A stretch of DNA of 64,000 nucleotides from Phallusia mammillata (taxonomy: Eukaryota), in contig OZ281497.1 in NCBI GenBank assembly GCA_965637545.1, positions 29,884,001 to 29,948,000 on the forward strand, read 5' to 3'. Both the position numbers and the translations under genes were made by a program. Below the pieces are notes generated by a model. That model had not been told where the DNA came from, did not search any database, and saw nothing but the letters and a program-made list of their open reading frames with translations. Shown piece by piece: positions 19,678 to 45,635 of the stretch (position 1 is the first letter of the stretch; every line of letters begins with the position of its first letter).

Positions 19678-19884
19678 ATGGACGATCCGGGTAAGGTTGG
19701 ACCCCAACTTCGCTTGACCCAAGGACCAGATGATGCTGAACCCCAATCAAACACAGTCGAAAGCCAGGGTGACGTTGTACCTCAGCACAGCGCAACGGAA
19801 GAATCCAGGGCTATGATACCCCAACTAAGCTCAGGCCATCCTTTGCCGGTTGGTGTACAGGGCAGGCATTTGGTTTTCAACTTG
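19678..19884 (+). CDS. NLR exon 1 (69 aa, MDDPGK...HLVFNL), low-complexity
   Basis: ATG with in-frame TAG at 19666; strong donor TTG|GTAAGA at 19885; a 55-nt intron to TTTTTGTACAG joins in phase 0. Confidence 0.65.
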
Positions 19885-22800: not shown

Positions 22801-25800
22801 TGTCTGCTTCGCGTCAGTGAACTTCAAAGCCATACCCGTGTACTGTATATTTAAGTTTGACAGTGAGTGCAGTTAAATAATTATTTTGTTATCATTAAAT
22901 TTATTGTTTGACTGTTAGTCATGACTTTGACTGTAAGTTAGATGACTGTAAGTGGGTTTCAGTTTTTACAGTTATCAATGAATTAACTAAGTGTATCTAA
23001 CACCTTGGAAAAAAAAGTCATCTAACACCTTGAAAAGTCACAATTAACCCTTATAATAAATAACTGAAGTAAAAGGTTTTGTGAAAGTATGGGACAAAAC
23101 ATCTGCTATACTCCAATGTCATGCAGGAATGAGCAACAACAAGAAATGCTACTAAAGAAAAAATAAATGTGTGACTGTGAAGTAAAATGTCTCATTGAAA
23201 TTCAGGCAATATTAAATGCAGAAGAAACAATTGCAGAAGCAACAGGAATTTTGAAATACCTGATTGAAGACAATTTATTAACACACCATGTGGACAGTAT
23301 TTGCAACCAAGTGCAATCATGTGTATTGATATAATGGACATGTACTGTTTGTCTAAAGTTTAGACTCTAAACCGTAGCTGCTAAATTGCTTCACAGAAAG
23401 TGTTTCGTAAGAGTGAACATTCTACAGACAAGATAGTAGTGACTCCGCAAGCACATCCTATTGTTGACAGAGAAAATCTAGTTACTCAAATGAGTATGTT
23501 TCTGTAGATCCGATGTTCATGATTACTTTGAAAATAATTAATCTAGAGATGATGTTTTGACAAGTTAAATTACTAGGATGAAAAATCTTTGTTGCTGTTT
23601 CCTTGAGAAAAAGGCGACTCTTTTTGAAACACTGAAAAAGATGCAAACTTTTCTGAGGAACACCATTATTTCCAAAAGACTTGCACTTGCACTGCTAGTA
23701 CTAAATAGAAAAATAGTTTTTTAGTTGTCATTTGGAATTAAGGAAGAAGCTATCAATCATCATGCCCAAACTATACCTTTATGATTTATTTCGGTTGTTA
23801 AAAGGTAGCACAAGATCTAATAATATGGTTTAAATTTAAGTGCGAGTGTTGCAAATTTTAAAGCTTGAAGAAGTTTTGCACTTAAAAAAGAAATTATAAG
23901 CTATGTGTCAGCAAGCAGCAATTATAGCAATTAAGAAAAAAGATAAAAGAAAAAATCTAAAAGACAATTAATAATCTGTACACAAAAATTCAAAGAAAAC
24001 ATGTTTAAATGAACAAGTTCTGAAACAAATGTAATGTGGTTGTTAAATTTGTCAGTTGTGATACCAATAAAAAGCTGTATTGCTAGTTTTTTTGTGTGAC
24101 AATAATCTGTGAAGTGTCATAGAATATGTTGAAAACGCTGACTGTGACTAAATTTACTTATATGAAACACGATATTTTTTTAATGTTGTCTAACTGAAAT
24201 ACTTCGACCTTTTTCGACTCATACTATTTTTTACTACCTTTTATTTCTACATTCCTGTTGTGTTTTACCGTATTTACAACCGCTTCGTTTCGAGTCTGTG
24301 CCACGTGTGTTTTTGTTTTTCACATTTTTACTGAACGTTATTGTGTTTGGCTCGTCGCTGTGCAACCAAACAAAATACACAAAAGATGCCGTCTGCTGTT
24401 CACACTCGTATACATTATTGCGTAACAAAAATTACGTCACAATGGAGTTGCAAATTAAGATTTGTATTGCTCGTTTTTCTGCACAAAACAATGGCTAGAA
24501 AACTAGAAATGTAGGTTTTCGATATATTGCCGACTTACATATGTTCATTAAATGCTAAAATTTGGAGCAGCACCCCCACAAATTTTAGGCACGAGCCGCC
24601 ACTGCCTTAGACAAAATCCAAACCATTAAAATATAGACTAAACAAAATAGACTAAACAAAACTATTTAAAATTCAAGCATAACCTAATGAAGGGAAACTC
24701 CATAAATTGTTTATATTTGATTTAAAATTGTTATATTTAATTTTGCTTCCAAGCCGAAGCTCTGCAGGGAAAAAGACATCCTGCGAGTTTGCAGCTGGGC
24801 TCATGAGTCAAATGATCCGGAGATTGCTTCATCTGTGGCCTCCCTACTTCCCGATGAGCTCGACTTTCGTGATTCATCTCTCCTCCCAGTTGACTACGAG
24901 ACTCTTTCGTTCGTGATTCAACACAGAGCGAAACCGGTAATACTGTGTTTTGTAAAGTGTGTGCTTAATTAGTTGCTGAAAAAAATGTTAAGTATGACAA
25001 AAGCCAATATATCTTTTTGTTTCTATAATGTCGATTTGTAAGCAAACCTATTTGTGACATTTTCAGAAGAATGCACCTTTTATTTTTATATTGTTCCCTC
25101 ACTTTTAAATTTGAAGTAGTTTGTTCAGTCAGCCCTATTTACAATTATGTCGATATCACAGAACCTAACGCGGTCACTACCAGGGTTTTGAAATCAAGGT
25201 TAAATCAAGGCAAAAACTGTGGAACTTTAACGTTTACCAACAGCATATCTGCGAAATAATCATGTTTACAATCATAAAACAGTAAAATTGTTACCGAACT
25301 TTTTTGGTAACCTATAAATTTAGAGAAAGTTGTTTGAGTGGGAGATCTTTAAAGCGACACCTTTCCAACTATCCCGCTTGTATTCTAATAACCGAGGCTA
25401 TCTCCTAATTCGTAACACGGTCCAAGACCATGCACTAACGGCTTATCGCTAAAACCAAATGTGATTCCACTACTGGTCAAAAATAATACATTATATTGCA
25501 TAAAACTTGAAACGTACTGTCCAATCACGTATCGCTAAGTTACACAACGCCACAGCAACACAACAACACAACAGCACCAAAAAAAATAACGCACACTTCA
25601 CCGGGGCCAGCTAGAGAACCGGTCCACACATCACGAGGGAAAAACACGTCACACGCTTCTAGTAAAGTAGTCAATCACGACGCGCCATGCGAAATTACTG
25701 AAGCGGGGATGCGTTCGAATTTTACTGGGGGGGGGGGACAATATACTTAATGCGTCACAAGGTGGCGCGATATACATTACAATAAATATATCCAAGCAAA

Positions 25801-28800
25801 TTATTCGTGTCAACAAAACAAACAAACATTATATTTATTAATAGACAAATAAGATTATTGTGAAAAACAAGTGCAATGACTAGATAATAAATAAGCGTGT
25901 AAACGAAGGTGCGAATTTAACAGTAAATAACGAAACTAAGTGAATACTGGTTCACGTTACAACATCATAACATCTCTATGGAAGGAAAGTCAATAAAACG
26001 TCACATGACTATCATCCAATCATTACCGACCACGTCTGTCGTGTCAATTTTTTTTTACTTGTGCATTAGGCTGACTAAAATTGATGGTTACATGTTTCGG
26101 TATATAATGGTGTCGTTGCAGGCTGAGAAGTAAGCATAGCTGTATATATCATATAAATATAAGGGTAAATATAAACAAAGAAGGCGTGGAAAATAAAGTG
26201 AAATGTGAAATTGTCCAAAGAAAAGTGTTAAGTTCGAGAAACACAAGATCAAGAACAAATGCATTAAAACATATAAAGTGCGCAAATACACAGACAAAAC
26301 AAAACTGTTGAAAGTCAAAGCACAACTTAATAAAGTAAAACTGAAAACAGTCTTGGTGCACAATACAAAAAGAAAATAACAATATTCGTATGCGATTATT
26401 GCAAGTGTCACAACAGACCAAAGTATTAATGCAACTTGAGCCAATATGTAGAATCGCCATGTGTATCGGTTGCCGATCATATGTCTGTAGCAGAAGTAGA
26501 ATCGTGTTGTCTATTTCTCTGTGTCTTGGTGGCAATATGCGCTTAAAATATACGAATATTTATTGAAATTTATACACATAACCAACTTGTATATCTGCCA
26601 TCTTGTCACACTTGTCAGTCTGTGATATTTTTTTATTAGTTTCATAACCTCTTTAACACTTCTATGACTTAAAGTTGCCATACATTTTTTGATAAAATAA
26701 AGTGTGTGCACGCAATGATATAAAAATATTCATTCAGAAACGTGCATAAAACCATTGCTACGCAAATGCGCCGCTTTAATTCGTTTGGAAATAAATACAC
26801 CCATTATTACTGAAAAGCAAATATTCTATCCAGGTATATTTTTCTTCTGACAACCGGCGTCTTCAAATGGTTATCTTGGGGCAAACGATTTAAAATTGTT
26901 AGGATAAAAAAATGTTATTTAATTTAGTAAATTAACTTTTGTGACGCCAGAATTTAATTTTGTCGTCACAATTGAAAGGACTCTTTCAATGAACTGGGAT
27001 AGTGAAAGACAAACAAGAAATACAAACCGTTATTTCGTTCCTAGTTTACCCGCATGCCAGAATGAAACAATAAACACAATTTAACAACAAACACATTTAA
27101 AAAAAAAATGCAAATCTAATGCTGGTTTTAAATAAATCCGGCCATGAAAAGTCGTAGCATTTATAGCAAGGAGCAATCCGAAGCGGTTGTGGTTTGTCTA
27201 TTTTTATTTACTAGCATTCGTCACTACGATCAATGTAATAACATTTGTTGTAAAAAAATTAGCTGAAGAAACTCAACCTCTCCGACAACAAGATCGGCAA
27301 CACGGGAGCAGCTTCGCTCGCTCCTTGCCTTCACAACATGGAAGAACTTATACTGAGAAGATGTGAGATCGGAAGTGAAGGCGTCGAGAAACTCTGCGAT
27401 GGAGTAAAAAAGCTAACAAAGCCGGTAAAAGTTGGTGAAATATGTGTTGTGTAAACTTTTTTAACAGCAAACATATCTGTTTGAGAAACGATAAACTATT
27501 TGCGCCAAAGCAAAATCCCAAATGCGCCAAATGAAAATAAATGTTTTGCATAATACAAACATCAGCATAAAAAAACGTTGATAGTATGGACTGATTTATT
27601 AGAAGAAGCAATGCAAGCCACACAGTGGTAACCAAATGACACCAGTATTATTGAGTAAAAAAAGCTGTAAAAATGGGTGGTATATAACACAGCATATAAA
27701 TGTAAATGTAATTTTTCTCAACTCACATATTTAGTTCTGTGCAAAGCAGTATTCACTTTTTTCTACAGGATTGACAATTATAAACACTGGCACAATGGCT
27801 AACAGTATACATTTACTGTCTTTGTAGCGAAAACTAGTCAGCTATATATTTAAGTATTTAAAAACCTTGGTCGCTATGACATATGCTGTACAGACGACTC
27901 CAGTTAACGGCATAATCCGGTTATTCGCAAAATCAATATGCCAATCCATTTGATGCGAATATACGAAATATGCTGTTAAAAGGTATGCGATTAACCAGTC
28001 GATTTTTTAATTAGCTACGGTTTAGGATTCACCATCTGTATGCAATTAATCGGATTGGGCGATTACCCTGTATTGGATTAACTGAATTCGTCTGCCAAGA
28101 ACTGAAATGAAACATACAACAAAACAATATTATGTAAAAGCCTATATCATACATGTGTCAAGGAACAGCATCAACGTATTGCGGTTAAACAACGTCCTTG
28201 GCTGCATATCTATTCGGGCGCTGGATAAAATTCTGGCTGTTATATCTGACGATGTGGCCGTTCGCCAAAGGTGTTGTAGAATAGTAGCCGATTGTCCAGT
28301 ATCTATATAAAGTGGAGTTGAAAAAAGACCAAGCTAATCTGATAAAACTTCAAACGAAGCACAGTGTTTTGCAATTACTTGTTAGATTGCGTCATTGTCT
28401 TGTTTTTGCAAAGACATCTGGAAAAACGAAGTTTGCTAAGCAGCTTTTGGTGTTCATCATTCCCCAAACACTGTTTGTTTGCAACTTACTGCAATATCGT
28501 TAAAACACGCTTCCATGTATCTCTCGATCACTACAGAGGAATCGGTAAAATCCATGGTTTAGGTAACAAGGGCACTGTCCCATCATTTCCGGACCGCGTC
28601 ATCAACTTGTATTTAACCACACAGTGTTAAAAAATGCACTTCTCGACGACATCCGACGACACATAAACAGAAGCAGAGGTTTTGATACCAGCAACGCTAA
28701 AATAAACACTTATAAGCCCTTCTATTCGAATGCGGCTACCGTTGGCACCAACAAAGCGGTGAGATGGTCACACCAAACAGGGTTTCAACTGTAAACAACC

Positions 28801-31800
28801 TTACACAAATATAAACAATTAAAATCAAGGCAAAACTGCGTAACTTCAACGTTAATAAACAGCACGATTGCGACACTCTATATCACCACGTTTACAACCA
28901 TTCATAAAAGGAAATTCAATAAAACGTAACATGACTAATATCCAATCATTACCAAGCACGCATGTCGGGTAAAAACTCTACTTGTGCGTTAGGCTGGCTG
29001 AAAATGATTGTTACATGTTTCGGCATAATGGTGTCGTTGCAGGCTGAGAAGTAAACATAGTTGTATATATCATATAAATATAAGGGTAAATATAAGCAAA
29101 GAAGAAATGTGAAATTGTCCAAATAAAAGTGTTAAGTTCGATATACACAAGAGCAAGAACAAATGCATTAAAAGATAAAAAGTGCGCAAAAACACAGACA
29201 AAACAAAACTGTTGAAAGTAAAACTGAAAACAGTCTTGGTGCACAATACAAAAAGAAAATAACAATATTCGTATGCGATTATTGCAAGTGTCACAACAGA
29301 CCAAAGTATTAATGCAACTTGAGCCAATATGTAGAATCGCCATGTGTATCGGTTGCCGATCATATGTCTGTAGCAGAAGTAGAATCGTGTTGTCTATATT
29401 TCTGGTGGCAATACACGAATATTTATTGAAATTCATTCACATAACCAACTTGTATATCGGCCATCTTGTCACACTTGTCAGTCTATAATTATTTGCTATT
29501 TGTTTCATATCCTCTTTAGCACTTCTATGACTTAAAGTTTGCATACATTTTTTGATAAAATAAAGTGTTTGCACGCAATGATATAAAAATGTTTATTCAG
29601 AAACGTGAATAAAACCATTGCTACGCAAATGCGCCACTGTAAATCGTTTGGAAATAAATAAAACCATTATTATTGAAAAAGCAAACATTCTTTCCAGGTA
29701 TATTTTTCTTCTGACAACCGGCGTCTTATAGCGATTGATTTTGGGCAAAAGATTTTAAAATGTTAGGATAAAAAAATGTTTTTTTAGTCAATCAACTTTT
29801 GTGATCCCAGAATTTTGTTTTGTCGTCACATTTGAAAGGACTCTTTGTATAAACCGGAATAGTGAAAGACAAACGAAAAATACAAACCGTTATTTCGTTC
29901 TTAGATTACCCGCATGCCAGAATGATAATTTAGCTTCGAAAAGCTTAAAAAACACAAATTAGAAATGCGCAAAAAGTCTCTTTCCCATAAAATGCTAAAA
30001 ACTTAATAAACTTAATAATTTGGTCGCAACAACCAACACAAAATTTCAACAACATATAAAGGTAGAAAACACAGTCATTATGTCGCCATTTAAAATTGAT
30101 TGTGGTGTTTTCATACTAGCCATTATGTCGTCATTCATTTAGGAGAAAAACCAAACGCTTTGTACAACCACGAAAGAAATAAGTTTTCCAATAAACGAAA
30201 CAAATGAGGTCAAAGTTTAGTTTTTGCAATATACGCCAAGATTTTATCGAATTTGATCAACATTTATCAAAATATGAGCGTAAGAAGAGCAAATACTGTA
30301 GGTCAATATCATCTAGTAATCATAGGCAAAATACACATACGTAACCAACTGCTTTTTGCATTAAAGGCCAATAAGTCCCTCTTATGGTGTTGCTGTGTTG
30401 TTTTTTGTTACAATTTGTTTGGTTGGTTTTACGAAGGTTCAAGCCGTAATCCCGGCGCCAACAGGTATTTGTTGAAATAATGTCAAAGTTAGACTCAAAA
30501 TTCAGATTTACCACGGCCAAATGTGATCTAATGGTAGAGTCAGGCCCGAATCTAGCCTGTTTCATTGAAACTCAAACCTGGCACTATTTCCAACTTAAGG
30601 TTATAATTGCCGGTCCAAACCAAACTAACTGACTTGTCCGAAAAAGCAAATAAACAAACATGCAAACTATAGTTTTAAAAAAGTATCAGGCGAAAACGAC
30701 GCTAGTTTAGATCTAAAACAAACAACTTTGTCACAGCCTGGTGTTTCTATAGCACGGTGGGCAACCTTTTAGCGCCGCGATCCAAATAAAGTGCTGATAG
30801 TGGGAAGGCGCGCCCGAAAAACATAAAAATTTGCGCACAATGTTCAATAGTGGAGGAACCTTGGTGGGACCAGTTGAGTGGGCACTATATGCCACCCACC
30901 CGTATTAGGGAAAGAAGGTGGGGTTTGACGGGAAAAGAAATCTTGCCGAAGACTTTTAGAACAAATCATGTTATTAATACACTAAGATATGAATGACAAA
31001 AGAATAAATAACGAAAGTAAAAAGAAATTAAAGCAATTTAAATAAACATAAAGATAATAAAAAAATAAAAAAATAAAACACGGCGCAAGTTTTGGTTGAC
31101 CAGCTTAGATCATTATATTTTGTCTTTGTGTCGTCTTTGGTTTGTCAACAACATAAACTTAAACTACGAATTGTAAAATGGCAAATCACAAAACTCACAC
31201 TACGCATATAAACCTTGCGGAAGTTTGTGCCGTGGGAAATAGAAGTATCGTTATATGCTTATCCAACTTCTGGGGGAAGTTGTGTAGCGACTCTACAGAC
31301 CCGCGACTGGCGAAGCATCTTAATTGTGTCTTTCATGTTTGTCGCGCTTTGGGAATCATTCTGTTTTTGATCTTCACCAAATAAACAGCGAACGCTCGCT
31401 TTAGGTGTATTTTCTTAAGAGCAACGATTTCGGCGGGTTTGCAAAATGAAAAAATATAACAATATGTTTCAACGATATAAGCAATGTTTGGCAAAGCACA
31501 AGCTTCAGAAAAAACACAAATCTGATGGCAGGTTTTAATTAAATCCGTCAATGAAAAGTCGCAGCATTTATAACAAGGCGTAATCAGAATTTGTGTTGGT
31601 TTGTCTATTTTGATTTACTAGCATTTGTCACTACGATAAACATGATGATATTTGTTGTATTAAAATCAGCTGAAGACACTCGACCTCTTCCACAACAAGA
31701 TCGGCAACACGGGAGCATCTTCACTGGCTCCTTGCCTTCACAACATGGAACAACTTATACTGTGGGAATGTGAGATCGAAAGTGAAGGTGCCGAGAAACT

Positions 31801-34800
31801 CTGCGATGGAGTGAAAAAGCTAACTAAGCCGGTAAAATTGTTGAATTTCGATTTAAGTTATATACAAGATTTTATACGATTACAAATGTTGCAACCGGTT
31901 TATTTCAACCTCATTTATTCTAAAAAAAATGCATTTTATAAGCATGTAATTGTTCTTTACAGATATTTTTGTACTGACAACGGGCGGTTTAAAATAGTTG
32001 CTCTGGGTGCGAAAGATTTTTAAATATTAAAGGCAGTAATTGTCACTCTAACATACCTTTGTTGCGACAGCATTCGAATATGTCGTCACAATTAAATCAA
32101 CTGTAAAGTTAAAAGTAAAATTTTACACAACACAAAAAAGGTAGAAGACCAAGCAGTTCTGTCTTTGTTAAAAATTTATTGTTGTGTTAATTAATATTGA
32201 CATAAACGCAAACCGCCTTAAAGCAGAATTTGACATCAAAACAATTGTAGCGTAACTTCGGTAAATTAAAAAACATAATAAAAATAAAATATGTTTGGTG
32301 GGAATTAGTGACGCAACAGCAAAGACAATGTTATGTTAATGACTGAAATTTATTTTTGACCTGTTTCTCAACACAATTTAAACTAAACAATCAACTTTAC
32401 ACCATAACTATTTATTTCCATTTTTTGTTAAATTGTGTGTTCATTACAAGCAGTTGGTGATCTAAATTCCGTAATTGTATGTGACTTAGCACATGGGTCG
32501 GCAACCTTTTTGCACTGCGGACCGTTGTTGAAACTGGAATTTTATCGCGGACCAACCTTCAAAAAAATACAAATAGTTAGGAATAATAACGCCTAAATTA
32601 GTTTACAATCCCCGGGAAACACGGGAAAATGTATCAAAGCATCTGGCCTGAAACCGAAACTACTCGCGGACCTGACTCAGCATGTGACGCCAAAGAAGAA
32701 TCGTTTAAATGTAACTTTACTTAACTTGCGAATACTACCTGGTATATCTGTTGTGTAGATGTGAAACCGAAAAAGAAATGTTCCGTTGATTGACTGATAT
32801 TTATTTGAGTAGAAAGCAATTTAACCATTTTTTACATAATTGGAAATATAAACAGCACATGTATCTAAAATCCATGGTCGCTATGACATATGCTGTACAG
32901 ATAAATCCACTTTATCACATAATCATTATACAAAGCTTTCTTGTGAAGCGGTCGAAGTTTATTGAGCAGCGGCGTCATGTCCGAGTTATGTTATAGCGTG
33001 TAAGAGATAGAGCAAACCGGCCTTTAAACAAGGCAATGGCGATTAAAAGTAAACGGCAAATAGCACGCTTCGATGCGCACAAGCGAACACGGTAGTGAGG
33101 TCGCTACACTGGTGCGATGAATTATGCGAAAATCTGGATGGAAAACAGAAGTACTAATTTCCACTTCCGTAGTTAAAATGAAGTTACTACTACACCCGTT
33201 TACATCCCAGAGATGCTTCCTTTCTCTTTTTTGTAGCATGGCGTAAAAAAAAAACTTTCTCAGAACCAGATCAACTCTCACAAAACAGCGCAAAGTGTGC
33301 CTGTAATAGTTTGGACTGATTTATTGGAAAAAAAACAATTCAAGCCACACAGTGGTAACAAAATGACACCAGTATTATTGAGTAACAAACCGCTTTTGTA
33401 TGTAAAAATGGGTGGTATGTGACACACAATGAAAGAGTAAATGTAATTTTTTTCAACTCACATATTTGAATCTGTACAAAAGCAGTATTCACATTTTTCT
33501 TCAGGATTGACAATTATGAACACTGACACACTGGCTAACAGTATATATTTACTGTCTTTGCAGCGAAAACTAGGCAGCTATATATTTAAGAATCTCAAAT
33601 CCTTGGTTCCTATGACATATGCTGTACAGATGACTCCAGTTAATGGCATAATCCGGTTTTCGCATATTCAAAATGCCAATCCTTTTTATTCGAATATACG
33701 GATTATGCTATTAAAAAGGTTTGCGATTCCCAGTATTGGATTAACTTGATTTTTTTGCGTTTAACTGAAATGCAACATACAACAAAACAGTATTAACCTA
33801 AAGTATGTGTCATACGTGTGTCAAGTAGCAGCTCAAATGTATAGCGTATAAACAATACACCGTTCTTTGGCTGCATATCTGTTTGGGGACTCGATAATCA
33901 TCTGGCTGTCGTATTTGATGAAGTGGTCGTTCGTTAATGGTCGGCCATGCCCTGTTATGAGTCGATTGTCCAATATCTATATTAAGTGTAGTTAAGAAAT
34001 GACCAAGATAATCTAACGTAATTGCAAATGCAGCACGATGTTTTGCAAAACCTTGTTCGAGTGCATCCTTTTCTTGTTTTGCAATGACATCTGGAAAGCA
34101 CAAAGTTCGCTTAGCAGCATTTGATGTTCATCATTCCTTAACACTGTTTGTTTGCAACTTTTGTGTTCGTCACATACTCGACTGCTGCAACATCGGTAAT
34201 ACACGCTCGCAGTTTCTCTCAAACACTACTGAGAAATCGGTAAAATCCCTGGTTTAAGTAACAAGGAGATTGTTTGACCATTTTCGACTGCGTTATCAAC
34301 TTGTAGTTTACCACACAGTGTTGATTTCGCATAATAACTATGCCTAAAGTGCACTCTTCCACGACATCCAAAGACACCTAAACAGAAGCGGTTGTTTTAA
34401 TACAAGCCACGCTAAAACAAACGTTTATTAGTTCTTCCATTCGTATACGGTCACATTTTGCCCCGACAACGCGCAAATTACTTCGGCAAGACTCAATCTT
34501 GACGTTTGTGAGTTTCTTATTTACAGCACTTGACACTACACTGAGGGTGGCCCCGGTATCAATTAATGCGAACACAGAAATGCCATTGATGTTTACGTTA
34601 GCATACTTATACAGCACACTCGCGTTGGTGTTTATCCTATGAGTTATCGTATTTTGACGCTTGATCTCAGGCTCCTGATAGAGAAACGGTGTCGGTTGTT
34701 GGGCACTTGTTTGCAATTTACAGTCCTGTATACGCAATCTTCTTTGCCTGCGATTTCTCGCAAAATGCTTTTTGCCATTACAATTATAGCACTGACAAGA

Positions 34801-37800
34801 GGAAAATTTCTTGCTCTCATTTCGCACATCGCTTAGTTCGAGTCGCAGTTGTTTGATTTCCTCAGCCAAGCGTTTTAACTGATCGGTGACTGGGTCAACT
34901 TCAGGCTTTAGCAGGGCAACATCGATATACCGCGACGTTGTGCTGTTAACAACAAAATCCTCCGCGGCCCTTGCTCGACGCGACGCGTTTTCTTCGAGCA
35001 ATTTTCGCGGAGTCAGGTATATGCGAAGCGTGTGTCTCTAGGGCCGTTAAGCAGAGAAGTGTACAGCATTGAACTTTTTTTCAAATCGAACTAACTGGCT
35101 TGTCTAACAAAGACTCTTGTCAACAAAAACGACATGCAAACCAAACTAAAAGTCCTTACAAGGCGATGGTGTCGCTCATATAGGCTACCTCAATTTTTTT
35201 AACAAACCATCAACTTTGTCGCAGCCCAGTGTTGCTCTAACTGTTTGAGTCTAACACCAAGTCGCTCGATACACGCACAAGGTCTGATGTAAAAGTTATT
35301 GTTGGAAACAAGGCCAGTGCGTTAACACGCTATTTAATCACTGCAATCGAACTATTTGTGGTAAGAATCGGCATATTTATGAGTTATGATAAGAACTATG
35401 GTTCAGGCCAGAATTGTAATCTGACATGAATTTGGACCAAACCCGAAACTGCAGTTCCGAAATCCGGTCGGAACCAAACTTTTTCAACACACAAAAAGTT
35501 TCTTTGTACCAATAATCATTGCGTGTATCAGATTCGTGGTATGTCTTGGTCCAACAAGCGCTCCAGTCGTTGCAATTACATCCTGATTTTTGCATCTGAC
35601 GCGTTGTTCCGACATAACACCCAGAAAGAAAGCAACGTGTGTTTTGTTTGAACAATGCAACATACTGAGTTTGTGCCGGGAGTTATCGAGTACACTGGGC
35701 AACAAAAAAATATTTTTTTCCTGGTGTCTAGAATGTTTTAAATGATTTTGACTAATTCTAGTGCCCTGATTTCAAAAATGCAATCAGTTTATCTGTATCA
35801 CGTCTAGTTTTCCTGTTATGGTTCATCCACATTTGAAAAACAATCTATATGTATACACTATAGTGAAACTGGTTTTGAGTATTTTATTTGGAATTAACGT
35901 TGTTGCAAGAACAAAATTTCGAATTTAATTTTAAATGTAACAGGTGGACACACCTAACTAACAAAATTCAACACAAAAAAACAAAAAAATGTTTCAAATT
36001 TGTAAGTTATCAGGTATACCCCTACACATGTACTTTGGTAACTTTCGAAACTGAGTGGCAACAATACCGTCCCGTTTAATTGACCAAACCCGTTTTGCCC
36101 CTTCCCTGACCCGTTTTGTTTTACTGATATCCTGTTGGAACCTTTTAGCTGACTTCTCATCATTCATATCCCCTACGTTTTAAGGGCAGTGTAGCTTTAT
36201 ACTCATTTTCGTGCCGAATGTTTCAGACCGCCTAATGACTTAATTATGTACTCTTTCTAATAATTTCAGTCCCTTTCTACTGTTTTTGTCCATTACTGCA
36301 ATATTCCAGCCAACATTAGGTAAGTGGAGCCCATTGCTTGTCCTAAACTCCTAAGGCCAGATCGAAGTGTGCAAGATATGCATATTTGAACAGATCTTTT
36401 TTACTTTTTTGTTGTGTTGTATGGGTGTACACCAAAACATCTTGGTAATTCATGCAACAACGTATAGATGACCTAGCCACTATTAATTTAGTTTTACCAC
36501 CTTGCTTTACTAGCCTGAAAATCACTCCATAAAACACGTATATTTTAAAGTTACCGCTAGCCCGCACCAACCATTTTTAGACAGACCATAAGCATAGAAC
36601 GCATGTTCATGCTATAAAACTGACTGCACTGTAAAAAATGATGTGTATAATGTAACAAAACTTTAACAAACACAAAAAAGCATGATTTAAAAGTCATTGA
36701 ATCAATATGGTCAAAAATTTTGATTTTGTAAATAACTTAAAAAATTGATCTGATTGAAGAAAACCGTAATGATTTTTGAAATCAGCACCCCGAAATTAGT
36801 CAATATCAATTTTAACATTAAAGACACCAAAAATTGTGTTGGCCAGTGTCATCGATTAGACATTTTTTTTCACAACATCCACCACTAGAAGGAATGTGGG
36901 ATAGTAAGAAAACATTGAAAACCGATAAATTGTTTTAGCACTGGTGACGTCATAACAAAAAAGCGACAATAACATTTTTTTCAAATTTGAACGCAACTAA
37001 ACTTTGTAACTAACTTGCAACTACCGTATGCTCTCTAAATGGAAGTTTATGCTGCAAAAACAATTCCGTCGTGTCAAGTTGTCAAATATTTTCTTAATAA
37101 AATGTTGAATTTAAAATGGATAATAAATAAGTGTCCGCTTGCAATAATACAAAAATGTTTAATCGAATGCGTGTAGTCAACTAATGCTTAAAAAAACTAA
37201 AAAAATAAAATATTGAATGTTTTAAATTAATTTTCTGGGTTAAACAAGTCAAACGTTTGCATCAATGCGTAATCCAAAGATGTGTTGCGATGTCTATTTG
37301 TGTTTACCTCAATTTGTCTCTAGGGTAAATGTGATAATATTTGTTGCCTTACAATTAGCTTAAGACACTGAACCTCTCCCACAACAAGATCGGCAACACG
37401 GGAGCAGCTTCACTGGCACCTTGCCTTAACAACATGGAACAACTTATACTGATTAATTGTGGGATCGAAAGTGAAGGCGTCGAGAAACTCTGCGATGGAG
37501 TGAAAAAGCTAACAAAGCCGGTAAAAGTTGTTAAATTTTGATCTCAGTGATGTACAAGATTTTATATAATGACAAACGTTGCAACCTGGTTATTTAAACC
37601 TAATTATATTTGAAAATATTGTTCCATTTTTATAAGCATCTACACGTTATTTGCAGATATGTTTTTACCGGTGTCAGTCAGTTCAATTAAATTCCCTCCT
37701 GCAGTTTGCAAGCTATTAACTTCTGATTAGGCTTTCATGCATCATGCCACATAATTCCATAAACTGGGTAAAAAATGCTTTTGTTGATGTTTTCATGATG

Positions 37801-40800
37801 TGTTTTGAATCTTACCTACCCCCTTTACGAGGAAAGTTTTGGTTAAGCTCGCGGGATTTGCGTTTTATTTTTGTTGTTGAAAGAACAGGGTAAATTACTC
37901 TAAATTACACGAATGAATTTGTGCATGTAAACATGCTTAATAATCTAAAAGTACCTGAGAGATATCAAATTTTGAAACAGTTCATTTACCAATAGTTGTA
38001 ATTGTCCATAAAAAACTAAAATTCCTTGGATAATAATAGTAATAGGACAATGTAGAGTCCGGGAAACAAATCAATGCGGAACAAAAACAAATTAAATAAA
38101 ACGCACTGATTTGAGCAATGCAACACATACTGCGGTTGTTTAATGCCGCCAAAATATCGATTAGTAAAACATTGTATAGCAATATCGATTACAGTGAAAA
38201 AGCTGACAAAGCATGTAAACCTTGGGGAGTCACTACAATTGCAGTTTGTTTCAAACTTTAAGATTATAATTGCTGAATCAAACCAAAATAACAACAAGCA
38301 AACCATCATACGGAAAATCTGTACAAGTCGATACTGTCCCTCATACACACACTTTGTTTCAGCGATGGAGTGAAAAAGCTAACAAAGCCGGAAAAAATGT
38401 TGAATTTGTTTGCTTTATAGCAAAGATTTCTGTTGGTTTCGGAAACGATAAACTAATAACTATCAGACCTTATAAAATATTTTGCAAAATGCAATGATTA
38501 ATAGTATAATGGAAAATAATTACAACATAATTATTCCAAAACTTGATGAAATATTTTAAGGTATATGGTTATGTTTCACAAAAACGGTTTATGCAACTCT
38601 ATGTGTCAGCTCTAATAAGTCAGATTTATATTTGTCGGCTAATTATTTATTTCTACCCGGCCTAGCATGCCTAATGAACACATACGAAGGCTCGAGGTCA
38701 GGGTCGCCATTTTGGTTTGGCCGGCAATCAAGGGTCTCTGATCCACGAGCAAATTTTAGTTAATATTGGCCAATTTCGCGACCCTCGAGTTAAACTCAAA
38801 CACTTTGGAATTATTTGAGCATACCCTAAACTGACGGAGGTTAGCCTTTTCTTTAGCTCCCACCTATCCAAACTTTAACATTAAATTGACCTGTTTTTTT
38901 TAAATGGCGGTATATACTGGTGTGTGTGGGGAATTTCAACCGATGTGGTCGGTCCAGGGGTAATGATTGGTCAGGATGGGCTTTGGCGCATAACGCGCGA
39001 GAGCGGTGTACAATCTATGACGTCACGAAGCTATTTTTCTAGCCTGAAACACGTGCTTTCCTTGAGGAAAAAACTATACAATATAGCGGCTATTGGGCAT
39101 GGGCACGTAATGGTGTCATCGGTAACGTGTGTTTCAAGAATACTCAGCAACACAAATAAAAATATATAAAACGCCCGTTCGTGTCGACAGAGATGACGCC
39201 CTTTCTCATCGACAGAGATGCTTCCTTTCCCTTCACTGTAGCACGGCGTAAATAAAATTACTTTCTCAGAACCAGATCAACTCTCACAAAACGGCGCAAA
39301 GTCGTGATTTAGCAATGTACGCACACATTCTACAACATGGCACAAACCGTTTAGTCTTTGTGTTTTTATAGTTGTTTTTGTCCTTATACAGATGTTCGGA
39401 CTTATTGCCCACGAAAGTTTTCTTTGACAAAATTCAAAAGCAAAAAAGTGTGTTACGAAAATGTAGAAGAGAAAAAGATGAAGAGGCCTGTCTCATCTCC
39501 CACTCAGCAAGTCAAACTTTTGAACCATGGCCGATGAGTTACGTTTACTGTGTTTTGAGAAATCATTTACATAGAAATCCACTTTCCAGTTAGTCACATA
39601 TTTTGTTCAAAATCTATCCGATTATATAGATTATGTTATGAAGAGGTGTGCGATTAACCGGGCGATTTTATCATCAAATGAGCTACCGTTTTGGATTACG
39701 GTGTATATGCAACTAAACGGATTGTGCGACTAAACAGTATTGGATTAACTGGATTCGTCTGTAGCTGCGTCATAGCATGTTCAGGCATTTTTGGTTTGCC
39801 ATTTTATGATCTACCATCAAGTGCAAAACTCGTAGTGAAACAAACATGTTTTACGCCTTTTCTTGGTTCTGCTGCAATAACGGGCTGACAGTACCCAGTT
39901 CAAATTCTTATTAAAATAGCAAAATATAAAGCGATAAAAGACAAGCAGCGACAGTTATGAAGCCCCGACACAACCCAAGCTCATATCCAACTGCCGTCTT
40001 TCAAACCTCGTGGGGCCACGTCACGTTCAAAATTGGCTACAGAGACGTAACATATACATACAATGCAAATTTTGACGTTAACACTGCGTCTTTTCACTGT
40101 TAACAACAAACTCGTTCGCGTTAATTGCTCGACCCGACACATCTCTGAAGCTTGGTTCTTCCTTCGAGCAATTTTCGCGCGGTAAGGTCTCTGCAAGGCG
40201 TTTGTCCGGTTAGCACAGGAGGCAGAGAAGTGTACAGGATGGTGTTTCTTAGTTTGTTGTCTTGGTATCCAAGCGTTACAAGAGCTAATACGAAATCTCG
40301 GTTGGTTTCATTCACTGTTTGAGTGCGTCTCGCCAGTCGGAGCCTTACCCTTCTTTTCGTATAATTGCATGCAACTACGGCGGTGGCTCGTTTCTTGAAC
40401 TCCTCATAAGCCACAGTTTTCATTTTCAGTTTTCTAGAATGTCAAACTTGTGTAATATTGTTAACGATATGAATTGAAATTTCTTCTTCTCACAACAGCA
40501 GTCCTGGCATGCTCGCTAATTTTTGTAACGGCCTTTTTAGATTCTGTAGCAATAACGGGCTGTCAGTACTTAAATCGAACTGTATTGAAATGATAAAGTC
40601 TAAAAACGATAAAAAGCAAGCAGCACATATATAACAGTCCCGACACAACCACCTCTAGATTCTAACTCCAACTGCCGGCCTCTACCCTCCCTTGGCCCAC
40701 GTATCTTCGGCAATTCGCTACAGCAGTGGTTCTCAAACTTTGTTTGCTGCGAAGCTTCTCGAAAAAGTTTTCTAGATTTGCGACGCACCAGCAAATAAAA

Positions 40801-43800
40801 GTTAATGAGGATACTTTTTATTAGTTATGTTTATTGATACAACAACAAAAATCCACGAAACGGAACTATTCTGCGATCCCCTTGGAAAATTAAAACGACG
40901 CACCAGAGCGTTGCGACGCACAGTTTGGAAACTACTGCGCTACAGCGACGCAGCATAGAAATGCATTAATGATGTCATAGGACTGTGCCAGAATAAAAAC
41001 GTAAATTTTTTATCCTGACTCCATGGTCGCTATGAAATATGAATCCTACGCATATGAATCCAGAGCAGAGCAAAAAACGTTGTCGAGCCCTGGTATAATG
41101 AATATACCCAGCTTTCTTAGAAGATTAACTGGATTATGCGATAATCTGAATGCAACACACGTTGTTAACAGAAGTGCTACACTTCCATAGCTGAAATTAC
41201 GTTACGGCGCTCGTATACGTCGACAGAGATGCTTCCTTTCTTTTCTTTGTAGCATAGAACAAATGAAAATTTTCTTTCAGAGCCAGATCAACTCTTAAAT
41301 CACAGAGCAAAATGTAGATTAATCTTTCAATAGATCTTTGGATGGTGCAAATGTTGTGTTTAAAGATTAGCAATCTACTTTAGAAAATCTTTTGAAGGCG
41401 ACACTGTCCCTTATACACACATTTTGTTTCTAACAAACCACTATTTCAAAGCTTTTTTTGGAATCTAGCATGGCGTACAACAAAGTATAGTGAAACGAAC
41501 GTGCAGCGCATACTTTTTACTCGTGTGTTGCTATAACACCACATCACCCGACACACGGATGTGAAATTTAATAGAAGAAGCAAGGCCTGGGCGCTTAATC
41601 ACGGAATTTGAAGAACGCAATTAACTTAAATAAATTTCTTGCATTAAGCTAGAAAAGCCAGGATTGGTTTGTAAATTCTCTTTAACAAAAATAGTGTGAA
41701 CATTCTACAGCTTAATTTTCATGTTTTCATGTCTTACTTTATCTTTAATTGATGAAATGCCAAATTTAAAGTTTAACAGAAATTATGTGTAAAAAAGTCG
41801 TAGCATTTATAACAATGCGTAAACTTAATTTGTGTTGTTTATTTCTAGTTACTTAAATTTGTCACTATCTAGTTACTTAAATTTGTCACGATGAGTGTGA
41901 TAATAATTGTTGCATTAAAATCAGCTGAAGAGACTCGACCTCTCCTGCAACAAGATCGGCAACACGGGAGCAGCTTCGCTGGCTCCTTGCCTTCACAACA
42001 TGGAAGAGCTTAAACTGTTGAAATGTGAGATCGGAAGTACAGGCGTCAAGAAACTCTGCGATGGAGTGAAAAAGCTAAGAAAGCCGGTAAATATTGTTAA
42101 ATTCTATCTTGCGGAAAATATTTTTTTTGCTTTATAACAAAGATTTACTATTTGTTTTGGAAACGATAAACTAATAACTAGTGATGTACCGATTCGTTTA
42201 AATTTCGGTTCGCCGAAACCCAAAATTCGGCGTTTTGCCGATTAAATTCGGCCGAATCAACCGAATCATTCATGACGTCACGCAAAGAGGTACGCTAAGC
42301 GTTTAAACGAAAAAATGTTTATCTACCAGGTAATTAGTACAGAATGGTTGTATTTTGTCGTCATTTTAGTCATATGGGGTTGAAAAAAGCATGATTGGCA
42401 ACCTGCCGAAGAATTACTTTTTTTTACTACAGTGGGAAAAACAATAATGTGTTGAAAAAGATAAAAATTGAAGCGATTTTGGTTATGTTTGGGCTTTTGA
42501 ATGATTGTGTGGACCTTAATAAGCAGAAAAGACACGTTTAACGCTTTAAATTTGTGCTCGTAAAAGATTTGGTTTACCGAATCTTTGCAAAAATGAACTA
42601 TTCGGCCGAATAAGTTAGGCAAACCGAATATTCAGTACATCCCTAATAATAACCATCAGACCCAAAAAAATATTTCGCATCGTACAAGCACTATTAATAG
42701 TATAGAACGTTTTAATGGAAAATAATCATAACATGATTGTTCCAAAACTTGGTATGTGGTTATGTTTCAAAAAACGGTTATGTATCACCTTGCAACTCTA
42801 TGTCTCAGCTCTAATGAATCCGATTTATATTTGCCGGCTAATAAATTATTTGTGCTTGGTCTAGCATATCTAATAACCACATACGAAGGCTCGAGGTCAG
42901 GGCCGCCATTTAGGTTTGGCCGACAATCAAGGTCCGCTTGCCCTCGCGCAGATTTTAATTAAAATTGACCAAGTCCGCAACCCTCAAGTTAAACTCAAAC
43001 ACTTTGGAATTATTTTAGCATGGCCTAAACTGACGCAGGTTAGCCTTTTCTTTAGCTCCCACCTATCCATACTTTAACATTAAATTGACTTGTTTTACTA
43101 AAATCGCGGTATATACTGGTGTGTGTGGGGAATTTCAACCGATGTGGTCGGTCCAGGGGTAATGATTGGTCAGGATGGACTTTGGCGCATAACGCGCGAG
43201 AGCGGTGTACAATCTATGACGACACGAAGCTATTTTTTAGGCTGCAGCACGTGCTTTCGTTGAGGAAATAACTACACAATATGGCGGCTTTTGGGCATGT
43301 TGCTGAGGCAGATATTTATTGTAGTACAAAACAATTCAATCCCTTACTTACATTACTAATAATAGAAGCAGTACTTTTATCCTGAATTCATGATCACTAT
43401 GATATATGCTGCACATAATAACCAGTTAATGGTGGAATCAATATGACAAGTTCTAATTTCCACTTCCATAGCTGAAATTGCGTTACTACGACGTTTGTTT
43501 ACACCAACAGAGATGCTTCCTTATTCTTTTGTAACATATAACTTTACTATCAGCAGGCAAGCATGGCGTTGCTGCATATGAATAGTTGCCAGTCTGCTGA
43601 TAACATAACTGACGTTTTGTATGAGTGACCGTAATGATAGGTTTCATTAGTAGTAGATAATATTTTAGAAGATTGTGTGGTGATTAGGCAGAATAGACAC
43701 GTTTTATGCTTTCGAATTTTGATTGTAAAATATTCGGTTTGGGCTGAAACGCAGCATATTATATAGCCAAATCCGGGTATTAGTCAAATTATCTGTTTCA

Positions 43801-45629: not shown

Positions 45630-45635
45630 AATAAA
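45630..45635 (+). terminator. Candidate polyadenylation signal of the NLR gene
   Basis: AATAAA 42 nt after the stop codon; a second lies at ~45660. Confidence 0.5.

What the first reader, a model, noticed from the sequence alone, without database searches (positions are those of the whole stretch)
27263..42086. Array of interchangeable phase-0 LRR exons with hypervariable ligand-facing residues
Seen: four 162-nt exons (two alternating N-type and C-type RI-like repeats each), spaced 4407, 5689 and 4566 bp apart. The framework is almost invariant (AAC AAG ATC GGC AAC ACG GGA GCA is identical in all four). The x positions of LxxLxLxxN/C vary strongly: KKLNLSD/KTLDLFH/KTLNLSH/KRLDLSC and EELILRRC/EQLILWEC/EQLILINC/EELKLLKC, and codons 32-33 differ in every copy by multi-base changes. 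By my count 16 positions vary in amino acid versus about 8 silent sites. Established: these positions form the concave binding surface, and exon-per-repeat LRR shuffling is known in other animal NLR expansions. Inference: a modular receptor-diversification system (unequal crossover or gene conversion plus diversifying selection, with combinatorial splicing possible) in an invertebrate innate receptor.
Basis: partly seen in the sequence, partly recalled or inferred. Interest (0 to 1): 0.85.

Follow-up and report, generated by a model that had tools for sequence, protein, structure and literature searches.

The report
Duplicated sensor exons in sea-squirt NLR
Four near-identical 162-base exons form the leucine-rich-repeat sensor of one intact sea-squirt NLR immune-receptor gene; they arose by tandem duplication and recombination, and their ligand-facing residues change faster than silent sites, a known way for innate receptors to diversify that I found no paper describing in sea squirts.

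Summary
Four 162-nt, AG/GT-flanked, phase-0 exons lie at 27263, 31670, 37359 and 41925, with the stated spacing. The 24-nt core is identical in all four, and 16 codons vary in amino acid against 7 that vary only silently.

They are the LRR exons of one intact gene of about 1066 aa: an N-terminal region without a Pfam match, a NACHT domain, four exons of two RI-type LRRs each, and a terminal LRR exon. The closest protein is Phallusia mammillata COS1.5 (72%).

- **Recombination:** flanking-intron homology and a switch of phylogenetic signal across the exon show unequal crossover or gene conversion.
- **Selection:** variation sits on the predicted concave face (8 of 10 x positions against 8 of 44 others, p=4e-4). 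A fixed-partition codon model gives omega_x=3.4 (p=0.004), but this rests largely on codons 32-33.
- **Replication:** two Clavelina lepadiformis NLR loci carry arrays of 162-nt phase-0 exons with the same hot positions (5, 7, 8 of each repeat). There omega_x is 4.2 and 9.8.
- **Splicing:** combinatorial splicing is not shown. RNA-like contigs show exons joined in series, but the exon family is multicopy.

Verdict: this is germline diversification of a known kind (compare plant and fungal NLR repeats and vertebrate LRR exon modularity), not a new mechanism.

The parts
19678..19884 (+). Coding exon 1 of the NLR gene (ATG at 19678, donor GT)
   Evidence: Aligns to the N-terminus of Phallusia mammillata COS1.5 (P0001). 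Sequence and donor seen. The spliced CDS is open.
19940..20457 (+). Coding exon 2: N-terminal region with the conserved QIGDTNIH motif and three 90-nt tandem repeats (20056-20325); no Pfam domain
   Evidence: tblastn to P0001, repeat family D7, no Pfam match. The 20457 donor and 20584 acceptor are inferred from frame and GT/AG.
20584..22246 (+). Large exon: NACHT NTPase (Walker A GQAGIGKTT), helical domains and pre-LRR linker, ending ...AAACCG|gt in phase 0
   Evidence: Pfam NACHT E=1.2e-18. 297 homologues, best 72% to P. mammillata COS1.5. Donor seen.
24754..24936 (+). Duplicate of the last 183 nt of the NACHT exon: open, phase 0-0, followed by GT; possible extra exon or pseudo-exon
   Evidence: Repeat D5/D13 and blastn 22060-22474 vs 24750-25186. 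Sequence. pS 0.19 vs pN 0.04 over codons 10-61. Including it keeps the frame open. Its use is not shown.
27263..27424 (+). LRR exon 1 (54 aa: one N-type and one C-type RI-like repeat)
31670..31831 (+). LRR exon 2
   Evidence: RNA-like contigs cover it and end at its predicted boundaries; some carry its own codon-32 base.
34378..35001 (-). Retroelement fragment (gag/aspartyl-protease ORF) inside the intron between LRR exons 2 and 3; may contribute to that unit's greater length
   Evidence: ORF. Weak Pfam matches to gag-asp_proteas, Asp_protease_2 and RVP, below or near gathering scores.
37359..37520 (+). LRR exon 3
38343..38390 (+). Relic of a further LRR exon: only its last ~28 nt remain, the donor GT is mutated to GA, and it is followed by intron of the unit-4 type
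   Evidence: tblastn fragment DGVKKLTKP, sequence, blastn 38359-39101 vs 42055-43299.
41925..42086 (+). LRR exon 4
   Evidence: An RNA-like contig joins an exon with this exon's KLRKP tail to a terminal-exon-like sequence.
45424..45588 (+). Terminal coding exon (divergent LRR, stop TAA at 45586-45588), with AATAAA signals at 45630 and 45660
   Evidence: HMM hit E=1e-6, sequence, Pfam LRR_6 27 bits, CDS check.

Best explanation
The four exons are the sensor (LRR) domain of one intact germline NLR gene of an ascidian. The gene comprises an N-terminal region without a known death-fold domain, a NACHT ATPase, four exons of two RI-type LRRs each, and a terminal LRR exon, about 1066 aa in all.

Shown:
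- Each exon is a 54-aa two-repeat module in phase 0.
- The modules are tandem segmental duplicates that share flanking intron.
- Units have recombined with breakpoints in or beside the exon.
- A relic fifth exon and a duplicated tail of the NACHT exon show continuing unequal exchange in the locus.
- Amino-acid change is concentrated at positions 5, 7 and 8 of each LxxLxLxxN/C motif. On a model of a homologous array these lie in the second half of the beta strand and the first loop residue.
- Change there exceeds synonymous change, while the framework is under purifying selection.
- The same architecture and the same hot positions recur in independent arrays in Clavelina lepadiformis.

Inferred:
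- The exons are spliced in series into one horseshoe whose concave face binds a ligand or a guard partner.
- New specificities arise over generations by unit duplication or loss, short gene-conversion tracts centred on the exons, and diversifying selection on the concave face.
- Activation then follows the usual NLR route (release of LRR autoinhibition, NACHT oligomerisation).

There is no evidence of somatic or splicing-level diversification.
For: - **Gene model:** open 3201-nt CDS with canonical GT-AG at every junction. NACHT matches at E=1.2e-18 and LRR_6 matches in every LRR exon. Only one NLR gene lies in the window.
- **Taxon:** best hits are ascidian NLRs, with P. mammillata at 72%.
- **Duplication:** flank homology of 66-86% over 300 nt and kb-scale shared intron blocks for some pairs.
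- **Mosaic history:** informative sites upstream are 12|34=10 and 14|23=0; downstream they are 14|23=10 and 12|34=3.
- **Concentration of change:** 8 of 10 x positions vary against 8 of 44 others; Fisher p=4e-4, permutation p=4.6e-4.
- **Codon model in the window:** omega_x 3.4 against framework 0.37. The test of omega_x=1 gives p=0.004, and two classes against one gives p=5e-8.
- **Replication in Clavelina:** L002 has two tandem genes with 5 exons each, and L003 has 7 near-identical exons. All are 162 nt, AG/GT and phase 0. There omega_x is 4.2 (p=4e-5) and 9.8 (p=2e-9).
- **Hot positions:** summed entropy over the three arrays ranks positions 33, 8, 32, 7, 5 and 30 first.
- **Against neutral proxies:** pN at those six positions is 0.36-0.52, against pS 0.075-0.134 and intron 0.11-0.29. 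Within the x codons pN exceeds pS.
- **Structure:** the AF2 model of a homologous five-unit array has strands at unit positions 1-7 and 26-34. It matches the LRR domains of NOD2, NLRP3, NLRP14 and ribonuclease inhibitor at TM about 0.7. The exon aligns to RI repeats.
- **RNA-like contigs (X3, X12):** they cover only exons and repeats. They show the NACHT-exon tail joined to an LRR-exon head, LRR tails joined to LRR heads, and an exon-4-like tail joined to a terminal-like exon.
Against: - The in-window selection signal rests largely on two multi-base codons. Without codons 32-33, omega_x is 2.2 (p=0.11). Multi-nucleotide changes and recombination are known to inflate omega.
- Measured against the flanking intron (raw 0.20-0.35 upstream), dN at the ten x positions is only about 1-1.3 times neutral in the window.
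- The six-position 'core' was picked after seeing the data.
- The RNA-like contigs laid on exon 2 differ from it by 6-7 letters. They may come from exon 1, exon 4, other alleles or paralogues. The expected exon 2 to exon 3 joint was not listed. The runs are only guessed to be RNA.
- No ligand, no population data and no full-length transcript are available.
- The closest transcript-derived protein, P. mammillata COS1.5, ends after the NACHT region without any LRR.
Confidence: 0.75

Rival explanations
1. Relaxed constraint only. The framework is held by structural purifying selection and the solvent-exposed x positions simply drift at the neutral rate after duplication. There would then be no diversifying selection, and the pattern is what any young LRR duplication shows.
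For: dN at the ten x positions (0.32-0.49) is about equal to the flanking-intron distance (0.23-0.47 JC upstream; 0.36-0.50 for both flanks) in the window. Without codons 32-33 the test of omega_x=1 is not significant.
Against: omega_x is significantly above 1 against synonymous sites in three independent arrays. pN at positions 5, 7 and 8 exceeds intron divergence in all three. pN exceeds pS within the same codons. The same positions are hot in different species and genes.
Confidence: 0.15
2. Combinatorial or alternative splicing. Because all units are 162 nt and phase 0, individual cells or conditions would include different subsets or orders of the exons, giving a repertoire of receptor isoforms from one gene.
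For: Any subset keeps the frame. Skipping of a modular LRR exon is documented for human NLRP3 (PMC6642158). RNA-like joints were seen that lay an exon-3-type tail before exon-2-type and exon-3-type heads, and no plain exon 2 to exon 3 joint was listed.
Against: Those joints are equally explained by exon 1 and exon 4 (not in the laid stretch) or paralogues being placed on exons 2 and 3. The laid contigs differ from exon 2 at 6-7 positions, and 7 is the number by which exon 1 differs over the same span. No docking or selector complementarity was found. Serial LRR-to-LRR joints rule out mutually exclusive use. The Clavelina five-unit 'isoform' difference is a read-through model over two genes.
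Confidence: 0.07
3. Decaying or non-functional array. The gene would be one of many recent NLR copies, and the exons would be on their way to pseudogenisation, with differences reflecting neutral decay.
For: The family is highly multicopy: exon bins are tens-fold deeper than unique-looking intron bins and at least 16 distinct DNA contigs cover one exon position. A relic exon and a partial exon duplicate lie in the locus. The nearest transcript in Phallusia lacks LRRs.
Against: All eight coding exons are open with canonical splice sites. Framework omega is 0.37 with 38 of 54 residues invariant. RNA-like contigs carry exon-2-specific bases.
Confidence: 0.03

Closest known systems
Exon-modular RI-type LRR domains of vertebrate NLRs (NLRP3 and relatives; ribonuclease inhibitor RNH1)
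   Same: One exon encodes two alternating LRRs. The exon border sits at a fixed point of the repeat, and exons are symmetric, so skipping or duplication keeps the frame (PMC6642158). The fold of a homologous ascidian array matches NOD2, NLRP3, NLRP14 and RI, and the exon aligns to RI repeats.
   Different: The exon is 162 nt (25+29 aa) rather than 171 nt (28+29 aa). The units are 76-85% identical to each other, far more alike than the LRR units of the related Phallusia and Clavelina proteins P0043, P0058 and P0025 (26-48% to LRR exon 1 of the window). No PYD, CARD or other death-fold domain was found at the N-terminus.
Zebrafish NLR-B30.2 (NLR-C) family
   Same: A large lineage-specific NLR expansion. 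The NACHT domain lies on one large exon and each LRR unit on its own exon. Unit number varies (0-6, or more than 20 of another type). There is a fixed distinct C-terminal LRR, and gene conversion and exon shuffling are inferred (PMC4852459).
   Different: The authors found the zebrafish LRRs 'not particularly variable' and placed recognition in the B30.2 domain. Here there is no B30.2 domain, and the LRR concave positions are the variable part.
Fungal NLRs with highly internally conserved repeats (Podospora het-d/het-e NWD family)
   Same: A NACHT protein whose C-terminal repeats are near-identical to each other. A few hypervariable positions on the interaction surface are under positive selection, and repeats are exchanged by unequal crossover or conversion (PMC1805685, PMC4986451).
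   Different: The fungal repeats are WD, ANK or TPR, not LRR, and are contiguous in one exon. Here each unit is a separate exon with 4-6 kb introns. Internal identity (76-85% aa) is at or below the 85% cut-off used for fungi. Repeat-number polymorphism and a role in allorecognition are untested here.
Plant NLR and receptor-like R genes (LRR xxLxLxx hypervariability)
   Same: Solvent-exposed beta-strand residues of LRRs show dN above dS, and LRR number changes by unequal crossing-over.
   Different: Plant NLRs use NB-ARC rather than NACHT, a different LRR class, and LRRs that are mostly not one unit per exon.
Lamprey VLR and insect Dscam
   Same: These are diversified recognition surfaces built from interchangeable LRR cassettes (VLR) or from alternative exons (Dscam).
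   Different: VLR is assembled somatically from an incomplete germline gene. Here the germline gene is complete and spliceable. Dscam uses mutually exclusive exons with docking and selector RNA pairing. Here exons are joined in series and no such pairing was found.

Membership tests
Animal NLR (NACHT-LRR) | NACHT NTPase domain with Walker A | tested here: met
   Pfam PF05729 E=1.2e-18, 67.9 bits against a cut-off of 26.7. The GQAGIGKTT motif is in the ORF 20612-22357.
Animal NLR (NACHT-LRR) | C-terminal RI-type leucine-rich repeats in the same gene | tested here: met
   LRR_6 scores above gathering in all four exons and in the terminal exon. The spliced CDS is open. An RNA-like contig joins the NACHT-exon tail to an LRR-exon head, but its assignment to this locus is not certain.
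Animal NLR (NACHT-LRR) | N-terminal death-fold effector domain (PYD, CARD, DD or BIR) | tested here: not met
   No Pfam family matches residues encoded by 19678-20457. Only a short conserved QIGDTNIH motif and 30-aa repeats are present.
Exon-modular RI-type LRR (two repeats per symmetric exon) | Equal-length exons, each encoding one N-type and one C-type repeat, with the same phase at both ends | tested here: met
   Four exons of 162 nt in phase 0-0. The same holds for 18 exons in Clavelina loci L002 and L003. The length is 162 nt rather than the vertebrate 171 nt.
Highly internally conserved repeats with diversifying selection (fungal NLR type) | Repeats of one protein at least 85% identical over at least 100 aa (criterion of PMC4986451) | tested here: inconclusive
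   Amino-acid identity between the four units is 76-85% over 216 aa, at or just under the cut-off.
Highly internally conserved repeats with diversifying selection (fungal NLR type) | Positive selection confined to a few surface positions of each repeat | tested here: met
   omega_x is 3.4, 4.2 and 9.8 in three arrays, with framework omega 0.37-0.75. The hot positions are 5, 7 and 8 of each repeat. The in-window test is fragile.
Highly internally conserved repeats with diversifying selection (fungal NLR type) | Exchange of repeats within and between loci (concerted evolution) and repeat-number polymorphism | tested here: inconclusive
   Within-locus recombination is shown. Exon pS is lower than intron divergence in all three arrays, and homology between some units is limited to the exon plus about 100 nt either side. 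Exchange between loci and polymorphism among individuals could not be tested.
Dscam-type mutually exclusive alternative exon cluster | Only one exon of the cluster per transcript, with docking and selector RNA complementarity | tested here: not met
   LRR-tail to LRR-head joints occur in RNA-like contigs. There is no shared complementary site between the first intron and the four upstream elements.
VLR-type somatic LRR assembly | Incomplete germline gene completed by copying flanking cassettes | tested here: not met
   The germline gene is complete, with canonical splice sites at every exon. Somatic change itself was not tested.

The most novel reading that the evidence does not exclude
Ascidian NLRs with arrays of near-identical single-exon LRR modules could be an animal counterpart of the fungal het-d/het-e type receptors. 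That would be a large, rapidly reshuffled germline repertoire in which unit number and hypervariable concave residues differ between individuals, possibly extended by exon choice. It might serve strain-specific pathogen recognition or even allorecognition in the closest invertebrate relatives of vertebrates.
Probability: 0.15. Interest if true: 0.8.

Novelty: new member of a known kind. Interest (0 to 1): 0.45.

Why it matters
Tunicates are the sister group of vertebrates and lack adaptive immunity, so how they widen innate recognition is a live question. This locus, together with the Clavelina arrays found from it, shows three things. Ascidian NLRs share a conserved 162-nt phase-0 two-LRR exon. 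Some genes carry arrays of near-identical copies of it. Positions 5, 7 and 8 of each repeat are the fast-evolving sites. That gives a concrete and testable set of candidate ligand-contact residues. It also gives a family in which repeat-number polymorphism, concerted evolution and isoform use can be measured with long reads. The mechanism itself (duplication, unequal exchange and selection on LRR surfaces) is well known from plants, fungi and vertebrates.

Tried and rejected
- **Word-indexed protein search with one 54-aa exon:** no candidate was found. It is limited to proteins of 30-94 aa, so the blank says little.
- **Metagenome contig L001 (a 41%-identical NACHT relative):** only one LRR unit lies within 10 kb downstream, so it was not informative.
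- **The look-up of encoding contigs for P0025, P0125 and P0136:** not on record. The longest isoforms P0272 and P0271 worked.
- **RefSeq isoforms of Clavelina as evidence of unit skipping:** rejected. L002 holds two tandem NLR genes, with a second NACHT exon at 34386-36176, and the 10-unit product is a read-through model.
- **Global MAFFT alignment of the downstream flanks as a neutral reference:** partly rejected. Units 1 and 4 and units 2 and 3 carry different downstream sequence types, so cross-type distances are inflated.
- **Dscam-like docking and selector search:** nothing beyond shuffles.
- **Searches of this scan's notes:** by sequence, blank; by words, only other NLR-type genes of the same genome.
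- **Paper search for 'COS1.5':** nothing relevant.
- **Folding the window's own spliced LRR domain:** not done, because a spliced protein has no reference and I did not type long sequences. A homologous Clavelina array (P0136:660-960) was folded instead.
- **Read laying:** usable once and for at most 6 kb, so only 31600-37560 was laid. Exons 1 and 4 were outside it, and their reads were necessarily placed on exons 2 and 3.

Full report
**Observation**

Shuffled sequence gives none, even with three mismatches allowed. Reading the four places and translating them gives four 162-nt segments: 27263-27424, 31670-31831, 37359-37520 and 41925-42086. Each is preceded by AG, followed by GTAAA and open in frame 0. 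Spacing is 4407, 5689 and 4566. Pairwise nucleotide identity is 87-90%. Sixteen codons vary in amino acid and seven only synonymously, and codons 32 and 33 differ in every copy, mostly by two or three bases. Each exon matches Pfam LRR_6, the ribonuclease-inhibitor type of repeat, in two stretches above the gathering score.

**What it belongs to**

Upstream, a 581-aa ORF (20612-22357) carries a NACHT domain (E=1.2e-18) with the Walker A motif GQAGIGKTT. Its best relative among 297 hits is Phallusia mammillata 'COS1.5' at 72% identity, followed by many NACHT proteins from ascidian-like contigs and by annotated Clavelina lepadiformis NLRs. The organism is therefore an ascidian. Its family was not determined; the 72% match to a Phallusia protein is the only pointer.

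Alignment to COS1.5 and inspection of splice signals give this gene model:
- 19678-19884, 19940-20457 and 20584-22246 (ending AAACCG|gt, phase 0);
- the four LRR exons;
- a terminal exon 45424-45588 with a stop codon and two AATAAA signals.

The spliced CDS is 3201 nt, open, and GT-AG at every junction. A profile of LRR units finds no further LRR exon in the window, and no second NLR gene is present. The N-terminal 240 residues have no Pfam domain.

**How the array arose**

The units share intron sequence around the exon: 66-86% identity over 300 nt including 142 nt of upstream intron. Some pairs also share kb-scale blocks further out. Units 1 and 2 share about 1.1 kb upstream and about 1.2 kb downstream. 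Unit 4 shares about 650 nt with sequence behind a relic exon. That relic (38343-38390) keeps only the last 28 nt of an exon and has lost its donor. The last 183 nt of the NACHT exon, with its downstream intron, is also duplicated at 24754-24936. The copy is still open and in phase 0.

Counting parsimony-informative sites shows a switch of history across the exon. The upstream flank supports (1,2)(3,4) by 10 sites to 0. The downstream flank supports (1,4)(2,3) by 10 to 3, together with shared indels. The four units thus carry all four combinations of two upstream and two downstream flank types. This is what unequal crossover or gene conversion with end points in or beside the exon produces. A retroelement fragment (34378-35001, minus strand) and high-copy repeats lie in the unit 2-3 intron, which is the longest of the three.

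**Where the variation lies**

I took as 'x' the positions 2, 3, 5, 7 and 8 of both LxxLxLxxN/C motifs, defined before looking at the data. Eight of these ten vary, against eight of the other 44 (Fisher p=4e-4, permutation p=4.6e-4). Nei-Gojobori distances are as follows:

| Measure in the window | Value |
|---|---|
| dN at x positions | 0.32-0.49 |
| dN in the framework | 0.03-0.08 |
| dS | 0.10-0.20 |

A fixed-partition codon model that I wrote (GY-type, F3x4, all branch lengths free, best of the three topologies) gives omega_x=3.4 and omega_framework=0.37. Rejection of omega_x=1 has p=0.004, and rejection of a single omega has p=5e-8.

There are two cautions.
- Without codons 32 and 33, omega_x falls to 2.2 (p=0.11). 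Multi-base changes are known to inflate such tests.
- The flanking intron is more diverged than the synonymous sites (raw 0.20-0.35 upstream). Against that yardstick the ten x positions are only about neutral.

From the window alone, diversifying selection is suggested but not established.

**Independent replication**

A profile of the four exons searched against 1.8 billion representative proteins found Clavelina lepadiformis NLRs whose LRR domains are runs of near-identical 54-aa units. I fetched two loci.
- L002 holds two tandem NLR genes, each with five such exons.
- L003 holds seven near-identical exons plus one divergent exon.

All 18 exons are 162 nt, AG/GT-flanked, in phase 0 and end in a proline codon, exactly as in the window. 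The exon design is therefore shared by both ascidians. The units of each array resemble each other far more than units of other genes (26-48% identity to other units).

The same a-priori partition gives omega_x=4.2 (p=4e-5) in L002 and 9.8 (p=2e-9) in L003. Summed entropy over the three arrays ranks positions 33, 8, 32, 7, 5 and 30 first, that is positions 5, 7 and 8 of each repeat.

| Mean pairwise raw divergence | Window | L002 | L003 |
|---|---|---|---|
| Nonsynonymous, six hot positions | 0.42 | 0.36 | 0.52 |
| Synonymous, all codons | 0.134 | 0.083 | 0.075 |
| Intron flanks | about 0.29 | 0.11-0.21 | 0.24-0.29 |

Within the x codons themselves pN exceeds pS, which argues against a purely local mutation hot spot. 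In all three arrays the exon's synonymous sites are more alike than the flanking introns. In the window some unit pairs are alignable only over the exon plus about 100 nt either side. Both observations fit short conversion tracts centred on the exons.

**Structure**

The exon aligns to ribonuclease-inhibitor repeats, NOD2 and NLRP3. I could not fold the window's spliced domain without typing it, so I folded a homologous five-unit Clavelina array (P0136:660-960). The mean pLDDT is 73.5, and the strands fall at unit positions 1-7 and 26-34, alternating with helices. The model matches the LRR domains of NOD2, NLRP14, NLRP3 and RI with TM about 0.7. The hot positions therefore lie in the C-terminal half of each strand and the first loop residue. 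From the published RI complexes (my own knowledge, not checked here), this is where most ligand contacts are made.

**Expression and splicing**

One call of read laying was available, on 31600-37560.
- Runs X1 and X2 cover the whole stretch and behave as DNA.
- Runs X3 and X12 cover only the two exons and some repeats and behave as RNA, though that label is a guess.

In the DNA runs the exon bins are tens-fold deeper than unique-looking intron bins. At least 16 distinct contigs cover one exon position, so this exon family is highly multicopy in the genome. Further variants of codons 32-33 appear, encoding ER in a DNA contig and KR in an RNA-like contig.

The RNA-like contigs end at the predicted exon boundaries and show three kinds of junction:
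- the NACHT-exon tail joined to an LRR-exon head;
- LRR tails joined to LRR heads;
- an exon with the KLRKP tail of exon 4 joined to a terminal-type exon differing by one base from 45424 onward.

The exons are therefore used in series, which excludes mutually exclusive splicing. However, the contigs laid on exon 2 differ from it by 6-7 letters. Seven is exactly the number by which exon 1 differs over that span, so they may come from exon 1, exon 4, other alleles or paralogues. The plain exon 2 to exon 3 joint was not listed. Some RNA-like depth does carry exon 2's own base at codon 32.

I found no complementary 'docking' site shared by the four upstream elements. The Clavelina RefSeq product with five extra units is a read-through across two genes, not an isoform. 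Combinatorial splicing therefore remains possible in principle, because of the frame, but it is unsupported.

**Comparison with what is known**

- **Vertebrate NLRs.** Strict exon modularity of RI-type LRRs is described for human NLRs. Exons are 171 bp with two repeats each, and the border sits at a fixed point of the strand. Skipping of NLRP3 exon 5 is documented (PMC6642158).
- **Zebrafish.** NLR-B30.2 genes have the NACHT domain on one exon and each LRR unit on its own exon. Unit number is variable, the last LRR is fixed, and gene conversion is inferred. Their LRRs were judged not particularly variable (PMC4852459).
- **Fungi.** The nearest parallel to near-identical repeats with a few selected surface positions is the fungal NACHT-WD family of het-d and het-e, and fungal NLRs more widely (PMC1805685, PMC4986451). 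That work found high internal repeat conservation to be rare in metazoan ANK, TPR and WD proteins.
- **Tunicates.** My literature searches found no description of such LRR arrays in tunicate NLRs. Those searches cover open-access papers only.

I therefore file this as a new member of a known kind. It is an ascidian NLR whose LRR exons duplicate, recombine and diversify at the concave face. The array and the recombination are clear. The selection signal is moderate in this window and strong across the family.

Noticed in passing
window 19940-20060 (also P0001, P0205): The N-terminal region has no Pfam domain but carries a short motif, APQIGDTNIHTTGSVYNAPVYQQH. It is conserved almost exactly in Phallusia mammillata COS1.5, and a related VHIGDTNV occurs in a Clavelina NLR. 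It resembles RHIM or amyloid-type signalling motifs and is the subject of another first-stage note (s1-399139).
   Followed up: partly
window 20056-20325: Three tandem 90-nt (30-aa) repeats (EQAHCSSQLPAPHHLDEETAPKLPTTAHSS-like) lie in the N-terminal exon. P. mammillata COS1.5 appears to have fewer copies.
   Followed up: no
window 24754-24936: This is a duplicate of the last 183 nt of the NACHT exon. It is still open, in phase 0-0, followed by GT and preceded by a possible acceptor. Against the parent, pS is 0.19 and pN 0.04 over codons 10-61, which hints at constraint. It could be an optional extra exon.
   Followed up: partly
window 38343-38462: A relic of a fifth LRR exon keeps its last 28 nt and has its donor mutated. 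It is followed by about 650 nt homologous to the intron behind exon 4.
   Followed up: yes
window 32396-32594 and 35580-36972: These intronic segments have very high summed depth in the DNA runs and some coverage in the RNA-like runs. They are high-copy dispersed repeats, probably transposable elements. A gag/aspartyl-protease ORF fragment lies at 34378-35001 on the minus strand.
   Followed up: no
L002 1001-45741 (Clavelina lepadiformis OX392440.1): The RefSeq 'isoform X1' (XP_076802099.1, 1228 aa) joins LRR exon 5 of one NLR gene to LRR exon 6 of the next tandem NLR gene. It skips the first gene's terminal exon and the second gene's N-terminal and NACHT exons. It is either a read-through transcript or an annotation artefact made possible by the phase-0 exons.
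   Followed up: partly
P0001 (Phallusia mammillata COS1.5, 696 aa): The closest transcript-derived relative ends shortly after the NACHT region (…KPKLSNIKEAL) and has no LRR. It diverges from the window's ORF at about 22093. This may be an LRR-less isoform or an incomplete transcript.
   Followed up: no
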